A stretch of 64,000 nt of DNA, taken from IMG/VR virus record IMGVR_UViG_3300027896_005002, positions 124,001 through 188,000 of that record; one strand, written 5' to 3'. Shown here piece after piece: positions 7,517 to 28,246 of this stretch (position 1 is the first letter of the stretch; each line of letters opens with the position of its first letter). The notes below the pieces were generated by a model. That model was not told the DNA's origin. It saw nothing but the letters and a program-made list of their open reading frames with translations, and did not search any database. A program made the translations under genes and the position numbers.

Positions 7517-7900
7517 TTATCCTTTTAGAACCTTTTTGTATTTTACAATTTTTAAAATTGGTTTGAAAAAGTTTGGTTTTTTAATGATAGAGCCTTCATG
7601 AGGCAATAATAAAGCCACTGCACTTTTATGCCGTTTTCCATGAAGATGAGATTCTGCATTTCCTTTTGGCATTGATATTTTACAAGTATCACAATAAAAT
7701 TCATGTTTGGGATCGTATAACGGTTCTTGCAGAGGTGGAAATACTTCATCATAAATTGTTTGAAATTCTGCCCGTTCATTTGCAGTGCATTCCATTTCCC
7801 AAGCATCAGCACCACAATAATCAATTATTCCTTTTGCGAGTTGTAAAGCTCTTTTGAGTTTTTCAAGTAAAGATTCTTTGATTTCGCCTTGGATATTCAT
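7517..7900 (-). CDS. protein with matrin/U1-type C2H2 zinc finger
   Basis: FYCDTCKISMPKGNAESHLHGKRHK. Confidence 0.55.
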   Translation of the reverse strand: MNIQGEIKESLLEKLKRALQLAKGIIDYCGADAWEMECTANERAEFQTIYDEVFPPLQEPLYDPKHEFYCDTCKISMPKGNAESHLHGKRHKSAVALLLPHEGSIIKKPNFFKPILKIVKYKKVLKG

Positions 7901-9036
7901 GCGTCCTCACTTTTATATTTTAATTGGGTCATTTTGCATTCACTTACATCAACGTCATCTCTTATTTCTTTGAAGCTTGGTTGGTATAAGCAACCGTTTC
8001 GATATGCGTAAAGGTATTTAATTTCGACGACTGATCCAATAGGTGGGTGCCGACTGCAACTGCAATAGCCGACAAATTCTCGATCACCAGCTCCATTGAA
8101 AAGTTCCATTCCTATTGAGGCTTTTCCAGTACGACCTTCAACGACGATGACTGAACATTCGGCATAAAATTTGAATTTGAATTGATCGAGACCTTTTCCG
8201 GGAGAGAAAATTGCTGACATTTTCTTGAAGACGATTCCTTCTTTTCCTTGGGCCTCGAGTTTGTTGTAAAAAGCGACTTTAGCTGCTTTGCCGACAATGA
8301 TGTCAAGGATTTTGATTTTGGGACCGAATCGTAATTGATTAAGAATATGATATCGTTGAAGATAAGGCAAAATGCGCAAATTCATTGTACCGAGTTCGAG
8401 GATGTCCCAAGTATAAAAAATGCCGTTGACTTGTTCACCATCGATGAGAATATTGGGATTGATATTACTTAGCGATGCTTTGAATTCCGAATCACATTCA
8501 CAACCGATTCCTTTTTTATTTCGAACAGTTAAAATACCGTTGGTCAAATGAAGAGAAAGATGCTTACCGTCCTTTTTTTCTTGAGCACAAAAATCATCGT
8601 CATCAAGCAATCGAGCAAGGTCATCTTCATCAGTTTCTGTAAGTAATTGAGGGATGAATCCAATGTCGATGTCATCGTCAGGTGCTTCCCTTCTTTCTGC
8701 AGCTTTTCTTCGATTTTCTCGAATTAATTTGAAAGCCTCGGTCGCTGTCCGGAATTTTACTGGATCGTTTTGGCCAGTTTGACTGTCTTGGTGACACTGT
8801 CTTACGATTTTGCGAAAGGCTGTTTTTACTTCATCCTCTGTTGCCGTTGGTGATACACCAATTACCGTGAAGGCTGATGTCGCAGTTAGATTTTTAGCAG
8901 AATCTGAATTTTTAAGAGCTTCACTAAAAATACCGGCCCATTGATTGGGATTTCCTTTTTCACCAGTATATGTACCGTATTTTGATGGTGATGACCAGAT
9001 AGAAGATTTTTTAGCCATTATCGAACTCCTCTGCAT
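7897..9036 (-). CDS. J-domain / ATP-dependent DNA ligase fusion (probable start 9018)
   Basis: J-like helix set AFTVIGVSPTATEDEVKTAFRKIVRQCHQD; ligase QEKKDG, IDGE, WDILE, EGIVFK; OB domain VVEIKYLYAY...LYQPSF...RDD. Confidence 0.8.
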   Translation of the reverse strand: MQRSSIMAKKSSIWSSPSKYGTYTGEKGNPNQWAGIFSEALKNSDSAKNLTATSAFTVIGVSPTATEDEVKTAFRKIVRQCHQDSQTGQNDPVKFRTATEAFKLIRENRRKAAERREAPDDDIDIGFIPQLLTETDEDDLARLLDDDDFCAQEKKDGKHLSLHLTNGILTVRNKKGIGCECDSEFKASLSNINPNILIDGEQVNGIFYTWDILELGTMNLRILPYLQRYHILNQLRFGPKIKILDIIVGKAAKVAFYNKLEAQGKEGIVFKKMSAIFSPGKGLDQFKFKFYAECSVIVVEGRTGKASIGMELFNGAGDREFVGYCSCSRHPPIGSVVEIKYLYAYRNGCLYQPSFKEIRDDVDVSECKMTQLKYKSEDA

Positions 9037-10137: not shown

Positions 10138-10908
10138 TCACCTATCAAGAATTGTAGTCTTTGAAATTGTTCCGCCTTGAGGTATTGAAATCAAATAACA
10201 GCCGTATTCTTTGCTATATTGACGGTGTATTTTGATGCCAGTTTTTTCCGAAGCGTATTCAATTGACCTATATGCATATGGAGGAACTGCAATACTTCCA
10301 TACATGGCATTCTTTTCCAAAAAGTCTAAAAGTTTGACGTAAAAATATGTTCCTTTTTTGGGAAGTGGGAAAAGAGTATTCTCAGTAGTGAACCTAGACT
10401 CTGTTCCTTGAACCAATTGATGTTTCCATTCTTTCCAATCGCCACTGATGATCCAATTGCACGGTTTTGGATAACCTTCAATGTGATAGACACAAACATC
10501 AAGACCTGAAAGCGTTTTTACAATTGATCGAGAATAAAAATTGCCCGGTCGATTTTCATCATAACCTTCTAATCGATCCAAGAATTGGAAGTGGTCAACT
10601 TCAAAAACTTCGCCATGTACAAGATAATTGAAAGGATCTTGAAGGGTAATGAAGGGAAATCCTACCGTAAAATTAAACATTCGACCTCGGATTTTATCTT
10701 TACAAATAAATTTGCCATTAGAATTTTCCATTACCTGATAATTACTTAATCCACGTAAAAGAGTCCCATATACAAAGACGAGTTTCTTCATACTTTTATC
10801 TCGATTTTTTTGAAAGATTTTTCGATCATTGGCCTTACAATAACCGCAATTTGTGGCACTTTCTTGTGACCGATGTTTATGACCTTCACGACAAAGATAT
10901 ATTGACAT
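10138..10908 (-). CDS. gamma-glutamylcyclotransferase (GGACT/AIG2-like) with extra N- and C-terminal domains
   Basis: VFVYGTLLRG..NY, VHGEVFEV, LDRLEG, Y.R; C-terminal domain shared with 22006..22425. Confidence 0.85.
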   Translation of the reverse strand: MSIYLCREGHKHRSQESATNCGYCKANDRKIFQKNRDKSMKKLVFVYGTLLRGLSNYQVMENSNGKFICKDKIRGRMFNFTVGFPFITLQDPFNYLVHGEVFEVDHFQFLDRLEGYDENRPGNFYSRSIVKTLSGLDVCVYHIEGYPKPCNWIISGDWKEWKHQLVQGTESRFTTENTLFPLPKKGTYFYVKLLDFLEKNAMYGSIAVPPYAYRSIEYASEKTGIKIHRQYSKEYGCYLISIPQGGTISKTTILDR

Positions 10909-11992
10909 TTTTGATGTCCTCCATCATTTGATTTCGAAGAAATGTTTCCAAAGCTAATGCTGTTGAATGCGATATATGACCAGCTTTTGCAAGATCCCAA
11001 ACACCCATAATTTGAAGAAGATATTTTTTGATACTCATATCTGTTCCAAATAAGATTTGATTGATCTTTTGAAAATTTCCGTAGCTTCTTCTGCTCGCAA
11101 AGCTGGTACAACGCCACCATGAGATTGAAAAGCAGCGATGACATTGTCATTTTTATCTTCAATGTAGCCGTAGTAATGGCCTTGACCGAATTCACTTACC
11201 CTTTGCGTGAGTTTGCAGTAAAAGCCGTCGATTTCCTGAATGAGAGTGTGAAATGTAATTTTTTTGTCGAATATTGTCGCAAGGTCGTCGCTCATAATGT
11301 GGCCGTACTTTCTTTGAACTGTCCGTAAGAGTCGCAAAAATTTTCCCAAACTCCAATGGGCAATTCAATGGTCGTTTTTTCGGAACCTTCGATAGCAATT
11401 GCTTTGACGATGGGCTCGCATAATTTCAGGAAGTTTTCAAATTCCTGTTTCATGCAAGTATAATCTTCAAAGCTGACGTATTTGCCATTGTTTTCTTGCA
11501 TCATGCAAGTTTTTACATCAAATCGTTTTACCATGATTTCCTCAGTTTAATTCATCGGGATTAGCGGTTTGCGATTCTTCGGCCGGCAAATTCGAAATCA
11601 AAGCATCGATTGCCTGTTGCCGTTCCAAAACCATCGCCTGATACGCTTCATAATCGTTTTGCGCCGGATTGGTCACCTTATAATCTTTCGTATAGGTGTG
11701 ACCGGTTTTGCCATCCTCATTGACCCAAATATGAAAGCCGGCAGCATCGGCCTTTTTCGAAAGAACGCGTAGCTTGGAGCATTTTTCCTCGATCTTCGTA
11801 TTGATCTCCGATTGCGTATCTTCATTACCGTCAGCTTCAGCAAATTCCACTTTGTGCTGGCCAATGGCTTTGTTGAGCATCCTATAGGCCTTGATGATTT
11901 GCAGGTTCGGGTCATCCGCGATTCCGCTTTTTGATACGATTTGTTTCGTCGCCATATCTTCTCCTTGTAAATGTGAACTGTGAACTTTTTTT

Positions 11993-12688
11993 TTACTTCG
12001 GATATTTGACCGCCGGTTGATACCTGCAAGCGGTTGTGACTTTTTCTACCGTTTCTTTTTGACCTTCCTCGATTGATTTCCGCATCTGGAAGTAATTGTA
12101 CGAAAAATCTTCCGAGGGTTTCACCGTTTTGACTACATTGAAAAAATCGTTGTATCGATCAGCGAGAAGCGTTTTCAAAGCTTCAACTTTTTCCGGGCGA
12201 AGGGTTGCGGTTTCAACAACCGTAAACATGATCTGGAATTTTTCCTTGAAGATTTTCTTCAAAGGTTCTTCCATTGCGATATCCATCGCGGAATATGATT
12301 CGCGGAATTGAATCTGCATCTGGGGTGGTTTGTAATTTTCTTCATCATCTTTGTCGGCACCTTTGATGTAAACCGTTTTGTAAAACATATCATCGTTGAA
12401 AGCTTTTTCTTTTGCTTTTGCGGCCTCTTTTTTCAGAACATCTTCGAGCTCCACTAATTCCGTTTGCAAGTTTTCGATGTTCCGGGAAATTTCGATGCAC
12501 TGATCAACGACGACTGTATAGGGTTTTTTTCCTTTATGATCTTCGGTTACCAAAGTGCAATCATCATCGAGAATGGGACTTTCAATAATAAGTTTATCCT
12601 TATTGCGGTCGTTCTGGTTCTTTTTGCTACCAGCCAACTTAATGGCAGGCAAATCTTCAATTACGACCGGTGCTGCTTTTTTCTTCAT
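11993..12688 (-). CDS. hypothetical protein, first gene behind a bipartite motif
   Basis: 231-aa ORF, SD AAGGAG. Confidence 0.6.
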   Translation of the reverse strand: MKKKAAPVVIEDLPAIKLAGSKKNQNDRNKDKLIIESPILDDDCTLVTEDHKGKKPYTVVVDQCIEISRNIENLQTELVELEDVLKKEAAKAKEKAFNDDMFYKTVYIKGADKDDEENYKPPQMQIQFRESYSAMDIAMEEPLKKIFKEKFQIMFTVVETATLRPEKVEALKTLLADRYNDFFNVVKTVKPSEDFSYNYFQMRKSIEEGQKETVEKVTTACRYQPAVKYPK

Positions 12689-12717
12689 ATATTCTCCTTT
12701 AAAAAAGTGATTTCCTT

Positions 12718-12768
12718 TTCCTATTTATATAATCAGTCATTTTTCACAAACCGCGTTCCAAAAGTGGC
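12718..12768 (-). promoter_or_regulatory. bipartite motif GCCAC box + TGATTATA box
   Basis: GCCACTTTTGGAACGCG...CTGATTATATAAATAGGA, 33-nt spacing. Confidence 0.75.
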
Positions 12769-12896
12769 TGTCGACCTAACTATTTAGTTATCCATGTTTT
12801 AGAAGAATCTGAATGGTTGTATATAGAACATAAATAAAAGTCGATGATAAAATGACACCAAAGATGAATTTGTATAATTTTCTCATATTGCTCTCC

Positions 12897-13496
12897 TCAA
12901 GCGTTGTTTACTTTTAAGAATGCACGACAATTTGGACATCGAAATAACCAATATTCTATTGATGTGGGATCGTTTTCGTCTTTTATTTTAACAGTTATCA
13001 AATCTTTTTTTGCATATTTTCTACCACAAGCCGGACATTCATCTCTTTTTATTTGTAAATTTCCTCTATTTGTTTCCCATACTTGTCCAGGTTTGCTGTT
13101 TGATTGTATCTTTCTCCAAACTTTACCAGATGCCCAGTCATGCTGTGATTGTTGATATCGTTCAAACCGTTGTCGAGCTTGTTTTTCAACTCGATAAATC
13201 GCATTGAGTAAATTTGATCGCCAACCATTTACTCTGAGAACCTTTATAGTCCTTATCCAACCAATTCTATCTGTGATATTTACCGCGCATATGCGAATTG
13301 CATCCTGACCTTTTCCGCGACCGTTACCATTTTGTTTTGAAATTGATGAATATACTTTTATAATAATTTTTGGATTCTCAATCAAGATTTTTTCATATAC
13401 ATATTCTCTGGTGGTTGAAGGTCCAGTAGCTTCTTCAAAAAAAAGATTTGCCATTACAACATTCATCTCGTTGAGAGTTATTACCGTATAATGCAT
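12897..13496 (-). CDS. hypothetical protein with C-terminal zinc ribbon
   Basis: CPACG...CPNC. Confidence 0.55.
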   Translation of the reverse strand: MHYTVITLNEMNVVMANLFFEEATGPSTTREYVYEKILIENPKIIIKVYSSISKQNGNGRGKGQDAIRICAVNITDRIGWIRTIKVLRVNGWRSNLLNAIYRVEKQARQRFERYQQSQHDWASGKVWRKIQSNSKPGQVWETNRGNLQIKRDECPACGRKYAKKDLITVKIKDENDPTSIEYWLFRCPNCRAFLKVNNA

Positions 13497-13767
13497 ATTT
13501 TCTCCTTATCGTCTTTTTGGTCTTTTGGAATTGTAACAAAGGAGTGCAGTAAATTACATCTTTTGTTTGCTTCATAATACGAGCGTGATCAACCAACATA
13601 TCAAATAGTTGGTAGCGACTTTCAGCAGATTTTGTTGTTTGAGAATAATTTCTATAAAATTTATCTGGAAAGGGATCATAAAGTACTTCAACTTTAACAG
13701 AAAATCTTTTTGTTTTAAAAGCTACTTCCGGAATTTTTGCCGTCAATTTAATTTTTTTCATTGTTTT

Positions 13768-13897
13768 TCTCCTATTATATATGATCATGTCACTACGTGT
13801 TGTGCGTTCCAAATGTGGCTGTAGAAAAAAACAAATCTACGACTGCCATTTTTGGACCGCAATTAGTGGATTGATATGATTATATAAAATAGGAGAA
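13768..13897. promoter_or_regulatory. back-to-back divergent pair of bipartite motifs
   Basis: Minus GCCACATTTGGAACGC (13819) and plus GCCATTTTTGGACCGC (13845), each followed 32 nt later by TGAT(T/C)ATAT and AGGAG. Confidence 0.8.
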
Positions 13898-13924
13898 TGA
13901 AAACAATAAAAAAGGAATGATTAT

Positions 13925-15121
13925 ATGATAACAATCGGATGTGACCCAGAGTTCCTAGTACTCGGGCCCGATAACATGGTTAAAGGCTTCAACATCGGTC
14001 ACAGTTGTCCCGCTGGAAATATTGGCACCGATCATGGTGGATCGGTTGGAGAATTAAGGCCAATGTATGGAACGCCCCGTCAGGTAACCGAAAATATTCG
14101 GGAACTTTTTCGAATCATTCACACCAAAACTCCTCGCGATAAAATTGCTGCCGGTGGCGGTGAAAAATACGGTCATTCAATCGGTGGTCATATTCACTTT
14201 GGTGGAGTACAATTGGATCATACTTACGAATCTTGCACACGACAAAGAAATCGCGGACGAGTGAGACCCTTAACACTTGATCGTTCCAGGACAGTTCACA
14301 AATTAGTTTATATGCTCGATTATTATCTCGGTCGTCGGTTGAAAAAAATTGACGGCGGACAACGACCAAAATCAGCAAATTACGGTCGTTTATCTGACAT
14401 CGAATCAAAAGGAACGGATCGATTCGAATATCGCACACCACCATCGTGGTTATCCGATCCGCAATTGACGGAATCCACTTTGGCAATTTCATATCGGATC
14501 GCGGAAATGTGGAAAGAAAATCCGCGATGTTTCGATGAAATCATCAACCGAAACAAAAGCATCGCCCGAAAAAAAGAATATGGAGTTTTAATTCCCAATT
14601 CTGGTGATCAAAGAAATTACTACTCTGAACAAGTTGCAGCTTTTAAGCGAATAGCTTTTTCGAAAACATACCGAATGGACAATGCCAATTGTTTGGACAC
14701 ATGGTTATCCGGTTCTCAAATCGCACAAATTGTCGATCGAATGTCGAAGAAGATTGCGTTGCAAATTTGCCAGATGAAATTGATAACAAATCAGGACGGC
14801 ATAGAATCAGAATCAGTCGTAAAAGTTTTGCGGTTTGCGGTACCTGAAGTAAAAATCATAGCACAGAGATTTAATTATCATCATGCTTTCCGGTCCCGAA
14901 TTAAGGATGACACAATTTACATCAGCAAAAATTTGAGACCGTATCTTAAGGTAAAACGCGGGCATCACTTCCGAGTAAAATTTGCCCAATTTGACAACAA
15001 CACTGTGGTTTATAAAACCGGCAACAGCAACATTTTGAATGAAGTAATAACAATTTTCGAAACCGGTGCAAGGAAAAAGCTTCGCAAAGCTGATGCAAAT
15101 TTGATACCGGCTCAGTCATAA
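13925..15121 (+). CDS. phiEco32-like COOH-NH2 ligase type 2 (amidoligase)
   Basis: TIGCDPEF, GELRP, GGHIHFG, YG...D, FEYRTPPSW. Confidence 0.85.
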   Translation: MITIGCDPEFLVLGPDNMVKGFNIGHSCPAGNIGTDHGGSVGELRPMYGTPRQVTENIRELFRIIHTKTPRDKIAAGGGEKYGHSIGGHIHFGGVQLDHTYESCTRQRNRGRVRPLTLDRSRTVHKLVYMLDYYLGRRLKKIDGGQRPKSANYGRLSDIESKGTDRFEYRTPPSWLSDPQLTESTLAISYRIAEMWKENPRCFDEIINRNKSIARKKEYGVLIPNSGDQRNYYSEQVAAFKRIAFSKTYRMDNANCLDTWLSGSQIAQIVDRMSKKIALQICQMKLITNQDGIESESVVKVLRFAVPEVKIIAQRFNYHHAFRSRIKDDTIYISKNLRPYLKVKRGHHFRVKFAQFDNNTVVYKTGNSNILNEVITIFETGARKKLRKADANLIPAQS

Positions 15122-15192
15122 AAAAATGAAGAAATCTGGCCAAACTGTAAAAAACTGTTGATTATAAACATATACAAAAAGAGGAGGATCAC

Positions 15193-15615
15193 ATGGCACA
15201 AGAAGTAATGCTTCAATTCGGAAATGATGATGAAGGCCTAAACTTGACCGGCACCGTCAATTTCCCAAATACGATTAACCTTCAAGGTCTCTCGGTCCTT
15301 TCAATCAAAGGTCTCGGGGAATGGCGTCATGCACCGGCCAATATCGTTCATATCAACGAACGAACGATTGAAACCTTCGGCATGAAGGAAAAGTCGAAGA
15401 ATCTTTCGAAGGTTGGTCTCAATTGGATCGGAATCAAGGCCAACAGCGACATCCTTTTGGCGCATTCGCTGCGTCACGGTCGGACCGGAACGAAAAAGGT
15501 GCAGGATTTATTGACGAAGTTTTTCAAGGCCATCGGCGCTTCTTCCGTCAAATTCAGTATCCTGGACACCGAAAAAGAAATGGCCCAACAGGCGGTACAC
15601 GACGATAATCAGTAA
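15193..15615 (+). CDS. hypothetical protein
   Basis: 140-aa ORF, SD GAGGAGG. Confidence 0.6.
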   Translation: MAQEVMLQFGNDDEGLNLTGTVNFPNTINLQGLSVLSIKGLGEWRHAPANIVHINERTIETFGMKEKSKNLSKVGLNWIGIKANSDILLAHSLRHGRTGTKKVQDLLTKFFKAIGASSVKFSILDTEKEMAQQAVHDDNQ

Positions 15616-15624
15616 TTCAGAAAC

Positions 15625-15652
15625 GGCCGTCCTAAATGGCGCCTGGACGGCC
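15625..15652 (+). terminator. GC-rich hairpin
   Basis: GGCCGTCC/GGACGGCC stem just after the 15615 stop; weak U-tract. Confidence 0.45.
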
Positions 15653-15705
15653 AATTCAATTGAACGGAATTTCCTTAACCAATAACAACCTTCAAAGGAG
15701 GGAAT

Positions 15706-16029
15706 ATGGCGACAAAAAAACTTAAGTCGCTTAAGATCGAACGCAAAAAGAAAAAGGCCAAAAAGCAGGCAAAAATTCGCTTGACCATCAAGGTCGCGAA
15801 AGTCGATCGCACGGCACGGAAAATCAAAGCCTTTGCGAAGAAATCCCTGAAATCAGCCATCAAGGGCCTCAAAGGCGCCAAGGTCAAAAAAATACCCGAA
15901 CGCCTTTACCGGAAAATCGATGCCGCAATCGCCGGCAGCGCCGATCTCAAAACAATCGTCGACGAAGCCGTCGTCAAAATGGTCAATGACAACCTTCTTC
16001 CCAAAAAGAAAGAAAAAGCGGAAGCATAA
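15706..16029 (+). CDS. histone H1-like Lys/Ala-rich basic protein
   Basis: Very basic K/A-rich N-terminal two-thirds. Confidence 0.55.
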   Translation: MATKKLKSLKIERKKKKAKKQAKIRLTIKVAKVDRTARKIKAFAKKSLKSAIKGLKGAKVKKIPERLYRKIDAAIAGSADLKTIVDEAVVKMVNDNLLPKKKEKAEA

Positions 16030-16035
16030 ACCGTC

Positions 16036-16191
16036 ATGGCCACTAAAAGAAAAAAGAAGGACACAAAATTGATTCCTTGTCCCGAATGGAATGAGGATTC
16101 AAAATGTGTCCTTCCTTCTTGGGAAAGCAAAAAGTGTGGAAAGAACTACTGCAAAATATTACCACATGTTGAAAACAAAAATATAATATGA
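16036..16191 (+). CDS. 51-aa Cys-containing small ORF (not in track)
   Basis: MATKRKKKDTKLIPCPEW...CVLP...CGKNYC. Confidence 0.45.
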   Translation: MATKRKKKDTKLIPCPEWNEDSKCVLPSWESKKCGKNYCKILPHVENKNII

Positions 16192-16210
16192 TAAAATATT
16201 ATAAGAACTA

Positions 16211-16391
16211 TCCGGCGTAGAAAGGTCGACGTAACTGTCCCTTCAAAACTAACGGAGCTTATTAAGCATTGAAGTTAGCTACGCACTTGGTAATTGAAGA
16301 AACATCAATTACATTCACTTACTAGAAAACTTAAATTGATTTTGAAGAACTGATTGAGACTGAGAATGCATGCTCGGTCTCAATTTTTTTT
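16211..16391 (+). ncRNA. candidate structured ncRNA ending in an intrinsic terminator
   Basis: Nested helices CTTCAAAA/TTTTGAAG, CTAAC/GTTAG, GCTT/AAGC, GTAATTGA/TCAATTAC; terminator stem 16354-16383 plus T-tract. Confidence 0.4.
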
Positions 16392-16410
16392 GAAATGATG
16401 ACAACCACTT

Positions 16411-17466
16411 TTAGCGACCAGTTTTGTCAAGATAAATTGGGTCTCTCTGTTTCAAGAATAATCTGCCAAAACCAACAATATATCTTTCTATCATTGGCTT
16501 TATCACTATTCCCTCTCTCAATTTATCAATCATAAAACTTTGACTATGAGAAGCTTCAGGCAATGTCCGTCCATTCAACCAATCCTTTAATGAAATATAC
16601 GTCGAAATTATAGGCACCCATATTGCTCTCAAACCTGTTCGATCTAATATAGGTTGAAGTTCATTATAACCCAAAGGCCGACCATTTATATCTATATCAA
16701 ACAACCTTGTCGTAAACTTCTTTAAATTATAATGATTACCTTGCACTCCAGGCCCTATAAACTCACTCCTTATAGTCACTGCACAATTTGGATAAAATTC
16801 TGATTGTATTATTTGAGCGGCTACTATTAATCCTTCATTTTTTGCTACTTGCCAAAAAGAATGATCTTCATGATCTGGCAAATTAACTATTCCATGACCA
16901 TGTGTACAAACACTTATTGTCTCATCTATACCAACAAAAGTAGCCATATTGCTACCTTCAATCTTCTCTGTTATCCACACTAATTCATTCATCAATATGT
17001 CAACAATATCAATATGAGTCTCACAATTCTCAATATCATAATTATAAACCATCTCAGGTCTCTGAATCAAATTACCTGTACTTGTAATTATCTCTGGCGC
17101 TTCATATTTAGTAACTCCTATAGCTGCTGTCAAATCAGTTGGTAAAGTATCAGTTTTTAAATATGTTTTTACACTATCTATGGATGTAACTAGTCCTTGA
17201 CTTATTTCACCACGTAAGCGAACAGTTTTGATTCTATTTTGATCTTTTCCAGACAAAAAATTCTTGATATTTTGTTGTTGGATAAAACCTTCAGGTAATA
17301 AAGAATCTATAGGGAAATATATTATTTCGTCACCAGTTTTATATAGACCTTTGGGTATTACAAATTGATATGTCATATCCTCGACTTGACCTAATTCAAG
17401 TTTATCTGCATTTGGATGAGGATACACTTTCGACAATTTCTTTCTTTCAACAGCAAAGGTACTCAT
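16411..17466 (-). CDS. RNA ligase, DRB0094/Rnl5 family
   Basis: N-terminal OB with HPNADKLEL and RIKTVRLRGEISQGL; ITEKIEGSN; SEFIGPGVQGN.Y; FDI; REGIVIKP. Confidence 0.9.
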   Translation of the reverse strand: MSTFAVERKKLSKVYPHPNADKLELGQVEDMTYQFVIPKGLYKTGDEIIYFPIDSLLPEGFIQQQNIKNFLSGKDQNRIKTVRLRGEISQGLVTSIDSVKTYLKTDTLPTDLTAAIGVTKYEAPEIITSTGNLIQRPEMVYNYDIENCETHIDIVDILMNELVWITEKIEGSNMATFVGIDETISVCTHGHGIVNLPDHEDHSFWQVAKNEGLIVAAQIIQSEFYPNCAVTIRSEFIGPGVQGNHYNLKKFTTRLFDIDINGRPLGYNELQPILDRTGLRAIWVPIISTYISLKDWLNGRTLPEASHSQSFMIDKLREGIVIKPMIERYIVGFGRLFLKQRDPIYLDKTGR

Positions 17467-17620
17467 TTTGATTCCTTTAGATAGATATGTGTTTCTCCCT
17501 CCGGAACTTGATTTATTTTATGCGTCAACCAACAATTAATTTACGTCGAAGATTTTTATTTTTTCTACGCGCCTAAAAGTGGCAGTTTGAACTCGAAAGT
17601 ATTTCTCCCCCTATATAATA

Positions 17621-17662
17621 TAAGGGACTCATCTTCAATTTCTTGAGAAGACAAGTCCCTTA
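17621..17662. terminator. long hairpin between RNA ligase upstream region and 17681 ORF
   Basis: TAAGGGACT/AGTCCCTTA outer stem with inner TCTTCAA/TTGAGAAGA pairing. Confidence 0.5.
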
Positions 17663-18127
17663 ATAAATAGGAGGAGGAAATTATTTAAAAATATCTGTAG
17701 TGTCTATAACATGAACTCCCGTAGAATCAAATTGAAATTGAGGTTTAGGTGTCACTGGTTTTGGAAGTGGCACAAGAAGTATCTGAATTTTGTCGAGATT
17801 TCTTTCAATTTTTTTCACAGAAACACTAATATTCAAAAGAGTAACTGTAATAATACAAAGTAAAATGACGATAATAACTTTCATATAATCCCTTTGGTTA
17901 AATCAGTTTCATAACGGAAATGAAAGGCAATTTCACGTGCATCTTTTGGAGACAAGCCTTTTGCTAATACCCACCCAAAAGCCAGAGAATACCAAATCTT
18001 GCTCTCGTGGTACTTCAATCGCAGTAGCTTTATCGGATACTTCTTGCTTAAAAGTTGTCTTTAAATCTTTGAGAAGAATTGTTCCGCTAGGAATAGTATA
18101 TTTTGAATGAGCACCGGCGAACTTCAT

Positions 18128-19087
18128 TTAATTATTTCCCTTTTTGTAAGTGATCTGTTTTGTGCCATTACTTCCGATTCGGACTATTTTCGGTGAATTA
18201 GGATCCTTAGGATTTGATCCACATCCTCGAACTATCGTCGGCTTTGACTCTCTTGAAAAAGATGTAATGCCTATCGGCCGATTTGCTTGTGTCACTTTCC
18301 GATAATTATGATCGTATTGACTTGAGGATAAGGGAGAATCATCGCTTTCATCGGAGGTATAAGTTATTGTCGCAGCTTTTTTCTTCTTCTCCTCTATAAC
18401 TCCCTTCCTCGAGAACTTATTTTTCACCACATCAAATTCCAGAAGTTCCCTTTCATAAAGGGTCGCAAAACTGATATTCGGGAATATTCCCATTTCATTT
18501 TTCACTCCCAACGTCTTCAACATGATTTTCTTTGTGGAAGCAAAAAATATTATCCCATGATACATTGCCATACATAACGGTTTCCCACCATCGGTATAAA
18601 AATACATTTTCTTCTGGGATTTCGAATACATCACCAAAGCTGCTGACCCTTCAATTGATGCTATTGCATTTTTGAGTGACGTTCTTTCCGTATAAGCGAG
18701 AATCGATTCTGAGTCGACATCACTTGTATATGGGTAATTTGCCAACTTATCTAAATGGACCGTTCCATTATGCACCAACACCCAATTTTTTGATTCAAAT
18801 GGATGTGCATTTCGATTTTCTTTGATTGTTGCAAGACTAGATGAAGCATATCGGCAATGGCCGATTACAAATCGTTCATTGCCAATTGTCGGACTGACGA
18901 AATGTTCATTGACAAAATCTTTGGCACAAATGGAAGCTTTTATAATTCCAGTTCCGAGGGAATAATATCCGGTAGCATGCTCTCCGCGTTCTTGGGTATT
19001 TATCAAACCCTTAACAAAAAGGGAGTTCAAATCAAGATCAGTTGTCGTTTCTTTTGTTGGTTTAATCCATCCAAATATTCCACACAT
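18128..19087 (-). CDS. class II glutamine amidotransferase (Ntn)
   Basis: MCGIFG with N-terminal Cys2, GHCRYAS, NAHPF, HNG, DVDSE. Confidence 0.9.
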   Translation of the reverse strand: MCGIFGWIKPTKETTTDLDLNSLFVKGLINTQERGEHATGYYSLGTGIIKASICAKDFVNEHFVSPTIGNERFVIGHCRYASSSLATIKENRNAHPFESKNWVLVHNGTVHLDKLANYPYTSDVDSESILAYTERTSLKNAIASIEGSAALVMYSKSQKKMYFYTDGGKPLCMAMYHGIIFFASTKKIMLKTLGVKNEMGIFPNISFATLYERELLEFDVVKNKFSRKGVIEEKKKKAATITYTSDESDDSPLSSSQYDHNYRKVTQANRPIGITSFSRESKPTIVRGCGSNPKDPNSPKIVRIGSNGTKQITYKKGNN

Positions 19088-20857: not shown

Positions 20858-21391
20858 ATGAAGTTCAAAGACATCAAACAATTCCCTCAAATCTACTACA
20901 ATGTCAACCTCTCATGGTCATCTCTTGACGACTGGCTTGCTCGTCAAATGAATATCGGTGAATACAAAAGTCAGAGAGAAGGCCTCTCCTCTCTCAACAT
21001 CAATCCTGACTTTCAACGCGGCCACGTCTGGACTAAAGACCAACAAATCGCCTACGTCGAATTCATGCTTTGCGGCGGCACTTCCGGTCGCAATATCTAC
21101 TTCAACCATCCAGGATGGATGTCATCCTTCAAAGGTGAATTCGTCCTTGTTGACGGTCTCCAACGCATTACTGCAGTCCAAGCTTTCATGCACAATAAAA
21201 TCCCAGCCTTCGGCTCTCTTATTGAAGACTACGAAGATAAAATGCCATACAATGTTGATTTCATAGTTAATGTGGCCAAACTCCAAACACGAAAAGATGT
21301 CCTCAACTGGTACATACTCATGAACTCTGGCGGCACACCTCACACTCAAGAAGAAATTGACCGAGTCAAAACTCTCAAGGACCAACTATGA
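20858..21391 (+). CDS. stand-alone DUF262 (ParB-like/GmrSD N-terminal) protein
   Basis: INPDFQRGHVW, NIYF, LVDGLQRITA. Confidence 0.8.
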   Translation: MKFKDIKQFPQIYYNVNLSWSSLDDWLARQMNIGEYKSQREGLSSLNINPDFQRGHVWTKDQQIAYVEFMLCGGTSGRNIYFNHPGWMSSFKGEFVLVDGLQRITAVQAFMHNKIPAFGSLIEDYEDKMPYNVDFIVNVAKLQTRKDVLNWYILMNSGGTPHTQEEIDRVKTLKDQL

Positions 21392-23767: not shown

Positions 23768-23802
23768 AATCGTGAGGCTTGTGACAGTATCTATATTTTT
23801 AG
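23768..23802 (+). repeat. direct repeat copy 1 flanking the helicase-MTase-rSAM operon
   Basis: AATCGTGAGGCTTGTGA exact 17-mer, then cAGTatcTATATTTTTAG. Confidence 0.8.
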
Positions 23803-24711
23803 ATACTTTTCTTTACTAGACAAGACTTTACATTCACAAAGTTCTGGATAGGGACAAATTTGTGGTTGTTTTAATAAATTTCCTAAATCAAAATCTTTTA
23901 CAATGAACTTACCTGTTCTAATTTGATTCCAGCATGTTACAATTTTATGTTTGCCGAAATCTTTATTATTATCACATGAAACAATAAAAAAATTACATCC
24001 AGCATTACAATTTTCACCTTTACGAATTTTTGGAATATCTTCTTCAATGGGAAATTTAGTTTTTATAAAATCCGGGCATAAATTGAAAAGATTGTTATAT
24101 TTTAATAAGTAGTCATTTTGATATGATCCGTCGGCGTTAATTACAGTCTTACACATACGTCCTTTTATACATCGTGGTATTATAAAAATGTCATGTTTAG
24201 AAAGAATATCAAATACTTCGTGATAAACATCTAAATTTGTTCGACCTATTATTAATGTTTGGCCATTTAATAAAATGGGTGTGATAATTTGAGTAACATT
24301 AATATTGACATTTCTAGATTTAAATTGCTTTATATTATTAATAAATTTATCTAAAAATTTTGATAATTCTTCATGAGTATTAATGTTCCGACATTCAAGA
24401 TGTAATGACACATAAAGATTGCCATTTTTAATTTCATCATAATTATAACTTTGTTCACTGAGTTTAGTATTAATTATATAGTTATAACCACATTGTTGAA
24501 TATATTCAATTATTTTATAAATGTTAACGTTATCAAAGGGTTCTCCGCCTGAGATTATAATAAGACTTGATTGAGGTAAATTTTTAAAAAATTTCATATT
24601 TTTGATATCAATATCACTGTATTGAAATTGATGTACATTGTCATTTACACAGTAATAGCATCTTGGTTGACAATTATTTCCCATTATATTTAGTTCAACT
24701 ACAATATTCAT
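23791..24711 (-). CDS. radical SAM protein with Cys-rich C-terminus (track ORF to 24837; probable start 24711)
   Basis: CQPRCYYC (CxxxCxxC), ISGGEPF, C-terminal CNAG...C...CPYPELCEC (Twitch/SPASM-like). Confidence 0.85.
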   Translation of the reverse strand: MNIVVELNIMGNNCQPRCYYCVNDNVHQFQYSDIDIKNMKFFKNLPQSSLIIISGGEPFDNVNIYKIIEYIQQCGYNYIINTKLSEQSYNYDEIKNGNLYVSLHLECRNINTHEELSKFLDKFINNIKQFKSRNVNINVTQIITPILLNGQTLIIGRTNLDVYHEVFDILSKHDIFIIPRCIKGRMCKTVINADGSYQNDYLLKYNNLFNLCPDFIKTKFPIEEDIPKIRKGENCNAGCNFFIVSCDNNKDFGKHKIVTCWNQIRTGKFIVKDFDLGNLLKQPQICPYPELCECKVLSSKEKYLKI

Positions 24712-24712
24712 A

Positions 24713-25315
24713 CTATCTTTTATAGAGGATGATTGTTCCAAGTATTGATTTGCTTTTATTGCCAGTGCCGTTATACATATAGATATTGTTGTTTGTTTGC
24801 CAATTATTTTCATGAATGTATCTGCAGAATCGTTCATTTGAGTTTATTGTTTTTTGTATTTCATCGTGTCGGCAGCATTGATGTCTGTTTTTTAAGATGA
24901 TGTTGATAGCGATCATTACTTCGTTTATTTGTCTGCGATTGAGAATTTTTAGTATTTCTGTTGTGAGGTTAATTGCTTTTTCTGGCATGTATAATGTGTC
25001 CAGGTTGACAATGCCGGGATTGAATGGTCTTTTAAAGATGTATTGTATGTGACCGCAAAACCAATTGCAGTTAGGTAATTTGTTTTTGTTAATGTTAATA
25101 GTTGTTGAATCGTAGTCAATGCCGAAATATTGTTTTTGAGTAATGAGGCCTGATTTGAAAAGTTGGTCAGTTTCGCAGTTTTCACCGATTTGTGGAGAGC
25201 ATAGAGAAATGAATGATTTGTTTTTGGGCATTGTGTGGTAGAATAGTTCTCGATAAGTGTTTATGATGATTTCTCGAGATTTAGTTTTTTTGGTGTCGTT
25301 AGAATATAATTTCAT
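24713..25315 (-). CDS. divergent class I SAM-dependent methyltransferase-like protein
   Basis: Order FISLCS (motif I-like), YFGIDYD (acidic end of beta2), NWFCGHI, GIVNLD (motif IV-like); glycine loop degenerate. Confidence 0.45.
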   Translation of the reverse strand: MKLYSNDTKKTKSREIIINTYRELFYHTMPKNKSFISLCSPQIGENCETDQLFKSGLITQKQYFGIDYDSTTININKNKLPNCNWFCGHIQYIFKRPFNPGIVNLDTLYMPEKAINLTTEILKILNRRQINEVMIAINIILKNRHQCCRHDEIQKTINSNERFCRYIHENNWQTNNNIYMYNGTGNKSKSILGTIILYKR

Positions 25316-28246
25316 TTATCTTCCTTGATAACTTTTACCTAGAAACCATTTATACCCACCTTTTTTCTTAAAATCTTTATATTTACCGAGTGCTCCTCTT
25401 AAATGACAGGATATTTTTCTGTTTTTGGGATTTTTCCACCATTTAATATATTCTGTATTACTTGAAAGATTTAATTTACTAATTATTCTTTGAGCCTTAT
25501 CAGTTGACCATAAATCAGAAGAAATTGTTATAAATGACACTTTTGTTTTTGAAAATTGTTTGCCGAAGAACCATTTATACCCACCTTTTTTCTTAAAATC
25601 TTTATATCTCCAAACATTAAGCAATAAATGACATGTAATTTTTCTGTTTTTGGGATTTTTCCACCATTTAACATATTCAGGATTATTTTTGAATCCTAAT
25701 TTGCTGACTACTTTTTGAGCTTTATCTAATAGCCACAAATCAGAAGTAAGATTTCTTAAAGTTTTTTTTGTTCGTTTTTTTAATATTCGTATATTGAATT
25801 GTTTGCCGAAGAACCATTTATAGCCGCCTTTTTTCTCAAAATCTTTATATCTGTGAACACGGGAGTATAAATGACATGTAATTTTTCTGTTCTTGGGATT
25901 TTTCCACCATTTAAGATATTCATAAGGATTAAAAAACTTAAATGGTCTAATTACTTTTTGAGCTTTATCTAAAGACCACAAATCAGTATAACTTTTACCG
26001 AAGAACCATTTATAGCCACCTTTTTTTTCAAAATCTTTATATCTATATACATGACTATGTAAAAGTTGTGAGATATCTTTATTTTTAGGATTTTTCCACC
26101 ATTTAACATATTCAGGATTATTTTTGAATCCTAATTTACTAATTACTTTTTGAGCTTTATCTAAAGACCACAAATCAGTATAACTTTTACCGAAGAACCA
26201 TTTGTAGCCACCTTTTTTTTCAAAATCTTTATATCTATGAGGTCGACTATGTAAATGTGATGATATTTCTTTATTTTTAGGATGTCTCCACCATTTAGCA
26301 TATTCATGATTATTTTTGAAACCCAGTTTACTGACTATTTTTTGAGCTTTATCAATTGGCCATATATCGCCATAAAGTCTTTCAACGCATTCTTTAAATT
26401 TTTGTAATGTTTCAAATGTTTCAAAAGCATTCATTGCGCTTAAGTAAATAAATGCCGGATTTTCTCTTACAATACCTCTATTTAATTTATTAATATCAAA
26501 TGTTATAAAGTCTTCTTTTGCTCTTTTCCATAATTTTGTTATAATTTGTTTTGTAAATACTGTAACATCAATATTTGTAAGATGATTATTTTCAATTTCT
26601 TCTTGAATTATTTCAGTCGTTATTTGTATTGATTGATTTTTAACTAATCGTCTATTTGTAATTAATTGTGGGTTTTCTGCAGTCCATATTTTCATTTCTT
26701 GAATGATATCATCATTAATATTATGAATTATATTTGCAGGCAATGTCTTATAATAATCTATATTATTAGATTCTTTATTTTTTTTTCTTTTAATTTTATC
26801 GTTTTTAACAGCTTTACACTGTGCATAAATATGTTCAAATTGCATTGAAAGTACTATAGAATTGTAATAATTTTCTTTTCGTTTTAATGATAATTCTTTA
26901 TCTAAATCTTCCATTGTATATGGTAAGATATGATATACAGTTGCATGATTTTTATTATTAGCTTTTCTTAATGCTCGACCCATTCTTTGTATGACATCTG
27001 TTATATTTTTCACTCCGGGTATTAATATTCTTGTTAAATATTTCCAATTAGCACCTTCTCTAAATGTTCTTAAAGCAACTACAAAATCTAACATTTCATT
27101 ATTATCACTATTATGAACTTTTTCAGTATAATCGTACTTTTCTTTTCTATCGGATTCAACTACTAATTCAATTCCTTTTAGCCATTTGCCATTTCTTTTA
27201 ATTCTTGTTAAAATACCATCATGTTCTATTTCGGGATTATCACTATTACTTATCATTTTAAAAATCATATTTACATCATTGTATTTACCAGTTGATTCTC
27301 TACTATTAACATCAGGTACATAAATCAATGATGGTTCCCACATTGAATCTCTATTAAGTATTACATTTGTTGCATCTTCATACGATCTTTCATATAATAC
27401 AAAATTGTAATCAAAATAATCAAAATTACAATCTCTTAAATGTTCGTCGTATGGATATTTAAATGTTGTTACTTTTTCCATATTTTCTTTAGATAGCAGT
27501 GACCATTTATCGCCTCTGAATGGTGTTGCTGATACTAATCCTAATTCATTATTTCTTTCAGGAAAAGAATGTACATCATGGACAATTTTTCCCATTTTAT
27601 TAAAAGTTATTAAATCTTCATTTTCATATTCTTCACATAATAAATGTTGAACTTCATCAATTGTGTAAAGTATGTATGTAAAAGCTTCAGGATTTAAATC
27701 ATAAGCTAGAACTAAAGTAGCATTACAGCATACTATTATTCTATCTAAAGGATCTTTATTTCTATAAGATGTAATTGCAGTTAATAATCTTTTAGCATTT
27801 GATAAATCTGATTTATCAATACCAATAATTTCAACATCCCAATTTATTTGAGATTTATCAGGTGCTATTATTTTCATGGGATTGAAACTTCGTGTAATTT
27901 GTCTTTGTGGTGTTGATATGATATTGAATAATTTTGGATTTTTTTGTAATTTTTTATAATTTAGAATAGCTATTTCAACAGCTTTTCCTGCGCCAGTTGG
28001 AGCATCAATTAAATAGTATTTTTTATTAAGTAATTTGTTGTAACAGTTTAATTGCCAAGGTTTTAATATAAGTGGTTGACCGGGTATTGATGGTTGAGGA
28101 ATTGAAATTGTTTTGTCAAAATCATCAATACAAAAAGATCTTTTAATTCGAACTCGATTACCGGGTTTTCCAAAAATTTGATTTTCATTACGCGAAATAC
28201 GATTACCGTCATCATCAAATAATGAATCAATGTCAATTTTATTCAT
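25316..28246 (-). CDS. SF2 helicase/ATPase with five C-terminal tandem repeats (integrase-repeat-unit-like)
   Basis: APTGAGK, DEVQH, SATP, QRMGRALR; repeats W..DKAQK...LGF....EY.KWW..PKN.......RYKDF.KKGGYKWFFGK. Confidence 0.85.
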   Translation of the reverse strand: MNKIDIDSLFDDDGNRISRNENQIFGKPGNRVRIKRSFCIDDFDKTISIPQPSIPGQPLILKPWQLNCYNKLLNKKYYLIDAPTGAGKAVEIAILNYKKLQKNPKLFNIISTPQRQITRSFNPMKIIAPDKSQINWDVEIIGIDKSDLSNAKRLLTAITSYRNKDPLDRIIVCCNATLVLAYDLNPEAFTYILYTIDEVQHLLCEEYENEDLITFNKMGKIVHDVHSFPERNNELGLVSATPFRGDKWSLLSKENMEKVTTFKYPYDEHLRDCNFDYFDYNFVLYERSYEDATNVILNRDSMWEPSLIYVPDVNSRESTGKYNDVNMIFKMISNSDNPEIEHDGILTRIKRNGKWLKGIELVVESDRKEKYDYTEKVHNSDNNEMLDFVVALRTFREGANWKYLTRILIPGVKNITDVIQRMGRALRKANNKNHATVYHILPYTMEDLDKELSLKRKENYYNSIVLSMQFEHIYAQCKAVKNDKIKRKKNKESNNIDYYKTLPANIIHNINDDIIQEMKIWTAENPQLITNRRLVKNQSIQITTEIIQEEIENNHLTNIDVTVFTKQIITKLWKRAKEDFITFDINKLNRGIVRENPAFIYLSAMNAFETFETLQKFKECVERLYGDIWPIDKAQKIVSKLGFKNNHEYAKWWRHPKNKEISSHLHSRPHRYKDFEKKGGYKWFFGKSYTDLWSLDKAQKVISKLGFKNNPEYVKWWKNPKNKDISQLLHSHVYRYKDFEKKGGYKWFFGKSYTDLWSLDKAQKVIRPFKFFNPYEYLKWWKNPKNRKITCHLYSRVHRYKDFEKKGGYKWFFGKQFNIRILKKRTKKTLRNLTSDLWLLDKAQKVVSKLGFKNNPEYVKWWKNPKNRKITCHLLLNVWRYKDFKKKGGYKWFFGKQFSKTKVSFITISSDLWSTDKAQRIISKLNLSSNTEYIKWWKNPKNRKISCHLRGALGKYKDFKKKGGYKWFLGKSYQGR
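25319..26370 (-). repeat. five coding tandem repeats (core 192 nt / 64 aa)
   Basis: First Trp codon of units 1-3 at 26362, 26170, 25978 (192-nt period); units 4-5 separated by longer linkers. Confidence 0.9.

What the first reader, a model, noticed from the sequence alone, without database searches (positions are those of the whole stretch)
25319..26370. Five helicase tail repeats with a conserved scaffold and one hypervariable patch
Seen: units are nearly invariant at DKAQ, EY.KWW.NPKN and YKDF.KKGGYKWF.GK, but the segment before the conserved Tyr changes in every unit: HLHSRPHRY, LLHSHVYRY, HLYSRVHRY, HLLLNVWRY, HLRGALGKY. Established: the unit resembles the integrase-repeat-unit helical modules found on some helicases. 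Inference: a modular, possibly programmable DNA-reading array in which each unit reads a short sub-site, targeting the ATPase.
Basis: partly seen in the sequence, partly recalled or inferred. Interest (0 to 1): 0.65.

Follow-up and report, generated by a model that had tools for sequence, protein, structure and literature searches.

The report
Phage helicase with basic repeat tail
A giant freshwater phage encodes a helicase-like protein whose tail is five copies of a small, very basic helical module, a divergent relative of the uncharacterised "integrase repeat unit", which most likely anchors the enzyme on DNA; the claim that it is a programmable DNA reader is not supported so far.

Summary
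Window 25316-28246 (-) is one intact 976-aa gene. It has a divergent SF2 DExH-type helicase core, a helical middle region and five 64-aa units (aa 627-974). Variability clusters at unit positions 40-44 (permutation p about 1e-4).

The units are old duplicates kept by purifying selection, not recent copies. The patch changes at about the neutral rate or faster, and five codons cannot separate the two.

The units are divergent relatives of Pfam INT_rpt (PF14882). There is no direct Pfam hit, but hhalign gives 97% over the N-terminal half, and language-model and predicted-fold matches point to INT_rpt clusters.

The patch is the family's canonical LPxxPxxxY loop with its prolines lost. The only close ortholog keeps near-identical LPTHP[KE]R[YF] in both intact units. 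Units 1-3 here still share [HY]S[RH][PV][HY].

The tail carries +62 net charge. Units 3-5 are joined by disordered linkers of unequal length. The same fold sits on homing endonucleases, transposases, integrases and other helicases.

Best reading: a multivalent DNA-binding tether on beads-on-a-string units. A unit-by-unit "code" is untested and unlikely. This is a new variant of a known but uncharacterised repeat family, of modest interest.

The parts
25316..28246 (-). Whole gene: 976-aa SF2 helicase-like protein with a C-terminal repeat array (P0001)
   Evidence: An intact ORF. Full-length homologs are P0002 (35% identity, E 2e-157) and P0011 (28%, E 6e-74).
26837..28069 (-). Divergent SF2 DExH-type helicase core (aa ~60-470). 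Motifs: Walker A APTGAGKA at 27980-28003, motif II DEVQH at 27644-27658, motif III SAT at 27509-27532, motif VI QRMGRALR at 26966-26989
   Evidence: Only weak DEAD, ResIII and Helicase_C hits, all below the Pfam cut-offs. phrog_9690 'DNA helicase' at 8e-07. The homologs pass ResIII/DEAD. Motif alignment, coordinates.
26369..26836 (-). Middle region (aa 471-626), conserved among the helicase homologs, no Pfam family
   Evidence: It aligns along P0002 and P0011. No family found (protein 8).
26177..26368 (-). Unit 1 (aa 627-690); patch HSRPH at 26237-26251
25985..26176 (-). Unit 2 (aa 691-754); patch HSHVY at 26045-26059
   Evidence: The AF2 model of this unit has pLDDT 89.5.
25793..25984 (-). 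Unit 3 (aa 755-818); patch YSRVH at 25853-25867; local rearrangement in the helix1-helix2 loop (RPFKFFNPY)
   Evidence: The patch has pLDDT<50 in the tail model.
25742..25792 (-). 17-aa basic linker IRILKKRTKKTLRNLTS between units 3 and 4
   Evidence: pLDDT<50 in the tail model.
25550..25741 (-). Unit 4 (aa 836-899); patch LLNVW at 25610-25624
   Evidence: The patch has pLDDT<50.
25517..25549 (-). 11-aa linker KTKVSFITISS between units 4 and 5
   Evidence: pLDDT<50.
25325..25516 (-). Unit 5 (aa 911-974); patch RGALG at 25385-25399; followed by GR and the stop codon

Best explanation
The gene encodes a jumbo-phage SF2 (DExH-like) helicase or translocase. Its C-terminal 350 residues are an array of five small, all-helical, strongly basic modules. 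These form a divergent sub-type of the INT_rpt (PF14882) repeat. I propose that the array is a multivalent nucleic-acid (most likely DNA) binding tether. Each ~64-aa module would fold on its own and contact DNA mainly through its many lysines and conserved aromatic residues. Several modules on partly flexible linkers would add up to high avidity, holding or loading the motor domain on DNA. This would be analogous to the tandem accessory DNA-binding modules of homing endonucleases and integrases. The variable patch is the surface loop that in the canonical family reads LPxxPxxxY. In this lineage the prolines were lost and the loop evolves at or above the neutral rate, while length, flanks (L39, R/K45, Y46) and a hydrophobic position 43 are kept. 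It may modulate what each module touches, but it is not shown to carry a recognition code. Shown: the gene, units, selection pattern, homology to INT_rpt, predicted fold, charge, and domain company. Inferred: DNA binding, the tethering role, and the loop being peripheral.
For: 1. All five units are maintained by selection. Synonymous divergence between units is large (mean pS 0.41-0.44, roughly two thirds of the saturation level expected from the genome's codon bias). Non-synonymous divergence is low, with pN 0.18 in positions 1-39 and 0.03 in positions 45-61. 2. Homology to INT_rpt is supported by the profile search, hhalign and the ESM-Atlas features and fold searches. 3. The single-unit AF2 model is confident (pLDDT 89.5, five short helices). 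Its predicted-fold neighbours (TM 0.65-0.74, 57-63 residues, rmsd 2.2-2.7) sit in clusters carrying Helicase_C+INT_rpt, LAGLIDADG_3, GIY-YIG, IS66 transposase and GmtZ integrase domains. Weaker matches are giant-virus SF2 helicases. All of these are enzymes that must be positioned on DNA. 4. The tail has net charge +62 over 350 aa (25% K+R, 7% D+E, 19% aromatic), against -1 for the 480-aa N-terminal part that holds the core, so this is not just AT-rich codon bias. 5. The same helicase family carries interchangeable C-terminal repeat arrays. P0002 has 3 INT_rpt-like units and P0011 has 6. P0020 has 5 HA (PF03457, 'helicase associated') repeats that are unrelated by hhalign. P0021 has another tail. 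This fits an accessory substrate-binding role. 6. In the tail model the units are confident but the linkers aa 818-836 and 900-910 are disordered, and pTM is 0.44. That indicates beads on a string for units 3-5.
Against: No experiment or solved structure exists for INT_rpt. There is no PDB sequence hit, no Foldseek match, and the best VIA-align Z is 3.5. DNA binding therefore rests on charge and guilt by association. The patch pN (0.69) exceeds the scaffold pS (0.42). That would also fit diversifying selection and hence a specific role for the loop. The Walker A Ser/Thr-to-Ala change and DEVQH for DExHH raise the possibility that the motor is impaired, in which case 'tethering a motor' would be the wrong frame. 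Basic repeats could equally bind RNA or acidic proteins.
Confidence: 0.55

Rival explanations
1. One reading: a modular, sequence-reading array. Each unit recognises a short DNA sub-site through the variable patch, so that the five different patches spell a composite target that positions the ATPase. This could in principle be re-programmed by swapping units.
For: Variability is significantly concentrated in one five-residue patch with strictly conserved length and flanks. The patch pN of 0.69 is at or above the neutral expectation. In other INT_rpt arrays with near-identical units (P0007, P0015) the x positions of LPxxPxxxY are also among the most variable columns. The fold accompanies homing endonucleases and integrases, which recognise long sites through strings of small modules.
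Against: The nearest ortholog, P0002, has near-identical patches in its two intact units, so patch diversity is not a property of the helicase sub-family. Units 1-3 share one motif. Only five units exist, with irregular disordered spacers of 0, 0, 17 and 11 aa, unlike TALE, PUF or PPR solenoids. The patch is low-confidence in units 3 and 4. No five-part DNA target was found in the phage genome: TRF gives mostly coding collagen-like repeats and one unrelated 22-24-nt array. Five codons cannot establish dN/dS>1. No closer orthologs exist to test position-specific conservation.
Confidence: 0.12
2. The array is a protein-protein interaction platform, recruiting the helicase to other phage or host replication or repair factors or to a phage compartment. 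The variable loops would give each unit a different partner.
For: Small helical repeats with variable surface loops often mediate protein binding. The units have many exposed aromatics (19% F/W/Y). The neighbouring genes are uncharacterised small ORFs.
Against: The extreme positive charge (+62) and the consistent fusion of this fold to DNA-acting enzymes of unrelated classes are better explained by a shared nucleic-acid ligand than by many different protein partners. The gene downstream is not conserved between the window and the P0011 locus.
Confidence: 0.15
3. The protein is a catalytically impaired pseudo-helicase. The Walker A Thr/Ser is replaced by Ala and DExH by DEVQ, so the protein acts only as a DNA-binding or scaffold protein. 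The variable patch would be simple neutral drift of a loop that lost its structural prolines.
For: GAGKA and DEVQH are unique to P0001 among five aligned homologs. The patch divergence is compatible with neutrality. The patches of units 3 and 4 are poorly ordered in the model.
Against: Motifs III and VI, the Walker A lysine and the D-E of motif II are intact. The ORF is intact and its repeats are under strong purifying selection. Gln in place of His in motif II need not be inactivating (general knowledge, not tested).
Confidence: 0.15

Closest known systems
Pfam PF14882 INT_rpt / PHINT_rpt ('Integrase repeat unit'), with the related PF18780 HNH_repeat
   Same: Tandem units of ~55-64 aa share the pattern [FW]-x-x-[DE]-[EK]-A-[QRK]-x-[IV]-[IV]-x-x-L-G-[LF]-K-x-x-x-E-Y-x-x-W and end in an aromatic-rich ...W-x-[FW]-L-G. 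hhalign gives 97% probability, E 1e-10, over columns 3-37. The profile of the window's units retrieves bona fide INT_rpt proteins. ESM-Atlas features score 0.89 with 191-195 of 256 features shared. Predicted-fold matches have TM 0.65-0.74. The family has no solved structure and is listed among repeat families without one (PMC8078820).
   Different: The window's units give no hit to the Pfam model even at E<=10, and ortholog P0002 reaches 23.4 bits against the cut-off of 26.5. The C-terminal half is remodelled: [RK]YKDF.KKGGYKWF.GK replaces xxxYKxxGWxxWxDFLGT. The two hallmark prolines of LPxxPxxxY are lost, except for one in unit 1.
SF2 helicases with C-terminal INT_rpt arrays (ESM-Atlas cluster 'Helicase conserved C-terminal / Integrase repeat unit domain-containing', 84 members, mostly Bacteroidota; P0011; giant-virus SF2 helicases in BFVD)
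   Same: The architecture is the same: a DExH/ResIII core, Helicase_C, a helical middle region and a tandem INT_rpt-type tail. P0011 aligns over its full length (28%, E 6e-74). The Atlas model of the tail aligns to the cluster representative with TM 0.53 over 309 residues. Klosneuvirus and Terrestrivirus helicases contain a module with TM 0.57-0.68 (E-values there are not significant).
   Different: Those proteins carry canonical units with the prolines intact. P0001 and P0002 form a rare sub-type. Only these two were found among 1.84 billion representatives, and none in 50,697 phage records for the tail or in IMG/VR by pattern.
Helicases with HA ('helicase associated', PF03457) repeat tails, e.g. 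homolog P0020
   Same: The helicase core is homologous (30% identity, E 7e-43) and is followed by five tandem ~75-aa helical repeats at the same position in the protein. This suggests an equivalent accessory role.
   Different: HA and INT_rpt units are not detectably related (hhalign probability 2%).
Programmable repeat readers (TALE, PUF, PPR) and the modular DNA-binding strings of homing endonucleases (NUMOD/IENR modules of I-TevI-type enzymes), compared from general knowledge
   Same: Tandem small modules have a conserved scaffold and a localised variable position set. The fold is associated with GIY-YIG, LAGLIDADG and HNH enzymes.
   Different: There is no regular solenoid (irregular disordered spacers, pTM 0.44). 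Only five units exist. No one-residue-to-one-base relation is known for any INT_rpt protein. The ortholog's units are not diversified.

Membership tests
Pfam PF14882 INT_rpt (Integrase repeat unit) | Score at or above the Pfam gathering cut-off (26.5 bits) against the family HMM | tested here: not met
   There is no INT_rpt hit for the whole protein, the whole tail or any single unit, even at E<=10. Ortholog P0002 scores 23.4 bits, which is sub-threshold.
Pfam PF14882 INT_rpt (Integrase repeat unit) | Homology to bona fide members, shown by profile methods | tested here: met
   The unit profile finds P0007, P0009, P0014 and P0017 (E 9e-9 to 4e-4), and these score 35-171 bits on INT_rpt. hhalign of A1 against A6 gives 97% probability, E 1.1e-10, but only over unit columns 3-37.
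Pfam PF14882 INT_rpt (Integrase repeat unit) | Hallmark motif LPxxPxxxY followed by GWxxWxDFLG | tested here: not met
   The window units read L-x5-[RK]-Y-KDF.KKGGYKWF.G. The first proline is absent in all five units and the second is present only in unit 1. Ortholog P0002 keeps LPTHPKRY.
Pfam PF14882 INT_rpt (Integrase repeat unit) | Same fold as family members | tested here: met
   The AF2 unit model (pLDDT 89.5) matches predicted models in INT_rpt-bearing clusters at TM 0.66-0.71. Both sides are predictions, and no solved structure exists.
SF2 helicase (DEAD/DEAH/ResIII + Helicase_C) | Pfam domain scores above cut-off | tested here: not met
   DEAD scores 17-18 bits (cut-off 26), Helicase_C 15-16 (23.5) and ResIII 14.3 (22.5). 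Homologs P0002 and P0011 do pass ResIII and DEAD, and P0001 aligns with them over its full length.
SF2 helicase (DEAD/DEAH/ResIII + Helicase_C) | Intact catalytic motifs I (GxGK[ST]), II (DExH), III (SAT) and VI (QxxGRxxR) | tested here: inconclusive
   Motifs III and VI, the Walker A lysine and the D-E of motif II are present. Motif I is GAGKA (Ser/Thr to Ala) and motif II is DEVQH where four homologs have DExHH. Activity cannot be judged from sequence.
Programmable repeat DNA readers (TALE-like logic) | Regular solenoid of many units, in which the variable residues contact bases and orthologous arrays differ in those residues | tested here: not met
   There are five units with irregular disordered spacers, and pTM is 0.44. 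The ortholog's patches are near-identical. Base contact is not testable with these tools.
Diversity-generating retroelement target | A template repeat and reverse transcriptase nearby, with variation confined to adenine positions | tested here: not met
   Differences between units involve all bases and are explained by ordinary substitutions from an LPTHP-like ancestor, for example Thr to Ser by two independent single steps giving AGT and TCC (inferred). No reverse transcriptase appeared among the neighbours scanned, but a dedicated search was not run. No variants were seen in the one metagenome, where only contigs were available.

The most novel reading that the evidence does not exclude
INT_rpt-type modules are sequence-reading DNA-binding units whose LPxxPxxxY-equivalent loop sets sub-site preference. 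In this phage helicase the loop has been freed from its proline frame and diversified under positive selection. The five units would then spell a composite address that loads the motor at a particular site in the phage or host genome. That would be a new, small, potentially re-combinable DNA-recognition module.
Probability: 0.08. Interest if true: 0.8.

Novelty: new variant of a known kind. Interest (0 to 1): 0.3.

Why it matters
INT_rpt is a widespread repeat with no solved structure and no experimental characterisation that I could find. It is attached to integrases, transposases, homing endonucleases and helicases of bacteria, phages and giant viruses. This phage protein offers a clean case: five units held under strong purifying selection, one loop free to vary, and a closest relative whose loops are near-identical. 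It could be used to test what the module binds and whether the loop matters. If the array proves to be only a basic DNA tether, the finding is an ordinary accessory domain on a phage helicase. Either way, it adds a sub-type that the current Pfam model misses.

Tried and rejected
- Direct Pfam, PHROG and NCBIfam scans of the units gave nothing useful. The best rows were chance-level hits such as RNAse_A_bac and B3R below cut-off.
- A word-index search for the tail among proteins of 537-1708 aa found only the protein itself.
- An IMG/VR pattern scan with the unit alignment gave 313 pattern matches but no relative.
- tblastn of the protein against 50,697 phage records matched only the helicase core, in two phages. 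megablast of the locus found nothing.
- Two profile hits, P0005 (FG-GAP) and P0012 (PPR), were rejected as low-complexity or repeat false positives.
- PDB searches by sequence and by fold gave no credible match. The best was Z 3.5 to the C-terminal part of RepB, and Foldseek E-values were all >=5.
- I tested whether HA repeats and INT_rpt are related. They are not detectably so.
- I looked for recent duplication or gene conversion that could explain the 'invariant scaffold', and rejected it. Synonymous divergence is similar in both halves (pS 0.41 and 0.44) and large.
- A DGR-like mechanism was rejected (see the membership test).
- A conserved downstream partner gene was rejected: the window's 200-aa ORF and the ORF after P0011 are unrelated. 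The 210-aa ORF after P0002 could not be read because no DNA was served.
- Population variation at the patch could not be assessed. Only one run holds the locus, and only as contigs, so there is no information on microdiversity.
- I looked for a candidate five-part DNA target in the 416-kb genome and found nothing convincing.
- The Tunturi_5 helicase neighbours were checked for repeat tails. No family hits.
Full report
**Setting.** The window is bases 124001-188000 of a single 416,029-bp IMG/VR virus record (31% G+C, estimated 77% complete). Nearly all long ORFs lie on one strand. The record encodes a Baseplate_J protein, PKD and Ig-repeat proteins, collagen-like proteins and a ribonucleotide reductase with an intein. 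It is therefore a tailed jumbo phage. The only public run that holds the locus is a freshwater metagenome.

**The observation.** The finding's coordinates (25319-26370) are the 3' end of one intact minus-strand ORF, 25316-28246, of 976 aa (P0001).

- Five 64-aa units lie at aa 627-690, 691-754, 755-818, 836-899 and 911-974.
- Units 1-3 abut directly. Units 3/4 and 4/5 are separated by 17 and 11 residues.
- TRF finds the array at the DNA level.
The one exception is that unit 1 reads KWWRHPKN.
- The five most variable codons are contiguous, at unit positions 40-44. They average 2.12 nt differences per codon against 0.60 elsewhere, and only 9 of 100,000 column shuffles reach that clustering.

It is somewhat overstated. 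Units 1-3 read HSRPH, HSHVY and YSRVH, which are one motif. Position 43 is always hydrophobic. Columns 4-5, 16-21, 37 and 62-64 also vary.

**How the units evolve.** The scaffold is not conserved because the copies are young.

- Mean synonymous difference between units is 0.41 in positions 1-39 and 0.44 in positions 45-61. With this genome's strong codon bias (82-90% A/T-ending two-fold codons), that is roughly two thirds of saturation.
- Non-synonymous difference is 0.18 and 0.03 in those two segments.
- All five units are therefore old duplicates under purifying selection, extremely strong over [RK]YKDF.KKGGYKWF.GK. There is no sign of recent gene conversion.
- The patch has pN 0.69 over about 12 non-synonymous sites. 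That is at or somewhat above what neutrality would give at this divergence, and the sample is far too small to call positive selection.
- The patch never changes length.

**What the unit is.** The window's units do not hit any Pfam family convincingly. In particular they do not hit INT_rpt, even at E<=10.

A profile of the five units searched against 1.84 billion representatives found 19 proteins. Two are false positives (FG-GAP and PPR repeats). The rest are tandem arrays of a ~55-60-aa unit with the consensus ..L.FEEAR..V..LGLK...EY..W......NIP..P...YK..W.SW.DFLGT.

Further support for the relationship:

- Several of these proteins pass the cut-off of Pfam PF14882 INT_rpt, 'Integrase repeat unit', and one also passes PF18780 HNH_repeat.
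- hhalign of the window's units against 43 canonical units gives 97% probability, E 1e-10, but only over columns 3-37.
- ESM-Atlas language-model features put the tail next to four 'Integrase repeat unit' clusters, with score 0.89 and 191-195 of 256 features shared.

The window's units are a divergent sub-type with a remodelled C-terminal half.

**What the patch is.** The only close relative is P0002, from an unrelated metagenome contig. It is 35% identical over the whole length and has three units, the last truncated. They read ...KHLPTHPKRYKDWNEKGGWSWFLG and ...KHLPTHPERFKNWNEKGGWSWFLD.

The window's variable patch is thus the canonical LPxxPxxxY loop of the family. Unit 1 (LHSRPHRY) is closest to it, and units 4 and 5 are furthest. 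The Ser codons AGT (units 1, 2) and TCC (unit 3) are each one step from a Thr codon, as in P0002's LPTHP. Ordinary substitutions therefore suffice, an inference.

In P0002 the two intact patches are near-identical. In other arrays whose units are very similar (P0007 at 80% mean identity, P0015 at 61%), the x positions of this loop are among the most variable columns while the prolines are fixed. The loop is thus a generally tolerant surface element. What is unusual here is the loss of its prolines.

**Structure.** An AF2 model of unit 2 with a 78-unit alignment is confident (pLDDT 89.5, pTM 0.70). It has helices at 5-15, 20-28, 33-36, 49-52 and 54-59. Positions 37-42 are coil and 43-45 form a short turn.

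- Nothing in the PDB resembles it convincingly. Foldseek E-values are all >=5, the best VIA-align Z is 3.5, and there is no sequence hit. This fits the family's listing among repeat families without known structure (PMC8078820).
- Among ESM-Atlas predicted models it matches modules (TM 0.65-0.74, 57-63 residues aligned) in clusters that carry Helicase_C+INT_rpt, LAGLIDADG_3, GIY-YIG, IS66 transposase and GmtZ integrase domains.
- In BFVD the best shapes are SF2 helicases of giant viruses, with non-significant E-values.
- A model of the whole tail (17-sequence alignment) has pLDDT 76 and pTM 0.44. Units 1-3 are confident and contiguous. The two spacers, and the patches of units 3 and 4, fall below pLDDT 50.

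I had no access to coordinates, so I could not say which face the patch or the lysines occupy.

**The rest of the protein and its relatives.** The N-terminal ~470 aa are a divergent SF2 core. Its Pfam scores are sub-threshold, and it hits phrog_9690 'DNA helicase'.

- Full-length homologs P0002 and P0011 pass ResIII and DEAD.
- P0011, on a 59-kb phage-like contig, has six canonical INT_rpt units.
- P0020 has a homologous core (30% identity) but five HA (PF03457) repeats in the same place. P0021 has yet another tail. HA and INT_rpt are unrelated by hhalign.

Interchangeable repeat tails on one helicase family argue for an accessory substrate-binding role.

P0001 alone has GAGKA for the Walker A GK[ST] and DEVQH for DExHH, while motifs III and VI are intact. 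Activity may be reduced, but this cannot be decided from sequence.

**Charge and context.** The tail carries +62 net charge in 350 aa (25% K+R, 7% D+E). The N-terminal 480 aa, which hold the core, carry -1. Neighbouring genes are small unknown ORFs, a radical-SAM protein, a vault-like protein, and enzymes of nucleic-acid and peptide-ligase type. No conserved partner gene was found.

**Interpretation.** The best-supported reading is a multivalent, strongly basic DNA-binding tether. It is made of independently folding INT_rpt-type modules and holds or loads an SF2 motor on DNA (confidence about 0.55).

The programmable-reader model is not excluded, but several observations count against it:

- the ortholog's near-identical patches
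- the shared motif of units 1-3
- the irregular disordered spacers
- the low model confidence of the patch
- the small number of units

I give it about 0.1. Protein-binding and pseudo-helicase readings remain open at about 0.15 each; the pseudo-helicase reading overlaps with the DNA-binding one rather than excluding it.

**Limits.**

- No closer orthologs exist in the collections searched. Position-specific conservation and site-wise dN/dS therefore could not be tested.
- Reads were available only as contigs from what is probably the source sample, so population variation at the patch is unknown.
- No DNA-protein modelling tool was available.

Noticed in passing
window 30234-32699 (-): An 821-aa ORF four small genes upstream of the helicase matches the major vault protein shoulder domain (PF11978, 7e-21, 75 bits) and a vault repeat (PF17795, 7e-10). 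A vault-like shell protein in a jumbo phage is unusual.
   Followed up: partly
window 27980-28003 and 27644-27658 (-): The helicase's Walker A reads APTGAGKA, with Ala where four homologs have Ser/Thr. Motif II reads DEVQH where they have DExHH. The motor may be impaired.
   Followed up: partly
P0020 (993 aa, metagenomic homolog), aa 617-993: A helicase with a homologous core carries five HA (PF03457) repeats exactly where P0001 carries INT_rpt-type units. P0021 has a third kind of tail. This looks like tail swapping within one helicase family.
   Followed up: partly
window 51394-51484, within the ORF-poor gap 51106-52042: A 22-24-nt unit (TATAAGCATAACTCTACCTATATA) is repeated about 3.3 times in a ~940-nt stretch without ORFs of 100 aa or more. 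There is no tRNA or Rfam hit. It could be an iteron or regulatory region.
   Followed up: partly
window 7897-9036 (-): A 379-aa ORF combines a DnaJ J-domain (aa 56-111) with an ATP-dependent DNA ligase adenylation domain (aa 202-287), an odd fusion.
   Followed up: no
window 10138-19087: A cluster of a GGACT-like cyclotransferase, a phiEco32-like COOH-NH2 ligase, an RNA ligase with an OB domain and a glutamine amidotransferase. A radical-SAM protein lies at 23791-24837 and an HD-domain protein at 34009-34626.
   Followed up: no
window 20858-21391 (+): A 177-aa ORF with a GmrSD_N (DUF262-type) domain (5.5e-11) lies on the strand opposite to most genes.
   Followed up: no
genome G000:C1:230749-234336 (L007) and both contig ends (e.g. 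410988-414020, L009): The ribonucleotide reductase large subunit is interrupted by an intein. The contig ends carry very long collagen-like and GYSG-type repeat proteins that dominate the genome's tandem repeats.
   Followed up: no
window 25793-25984 (-), unit 3, aa 767-775: Unit 3 reads RPFKFFNPY where the others read SKLGFKNNP. At the DNA level the AATCCT word is shifted by one codon, so the change looks like a local in-frame indel pair in the helix1-helix2 loop.
   Followed up: partly
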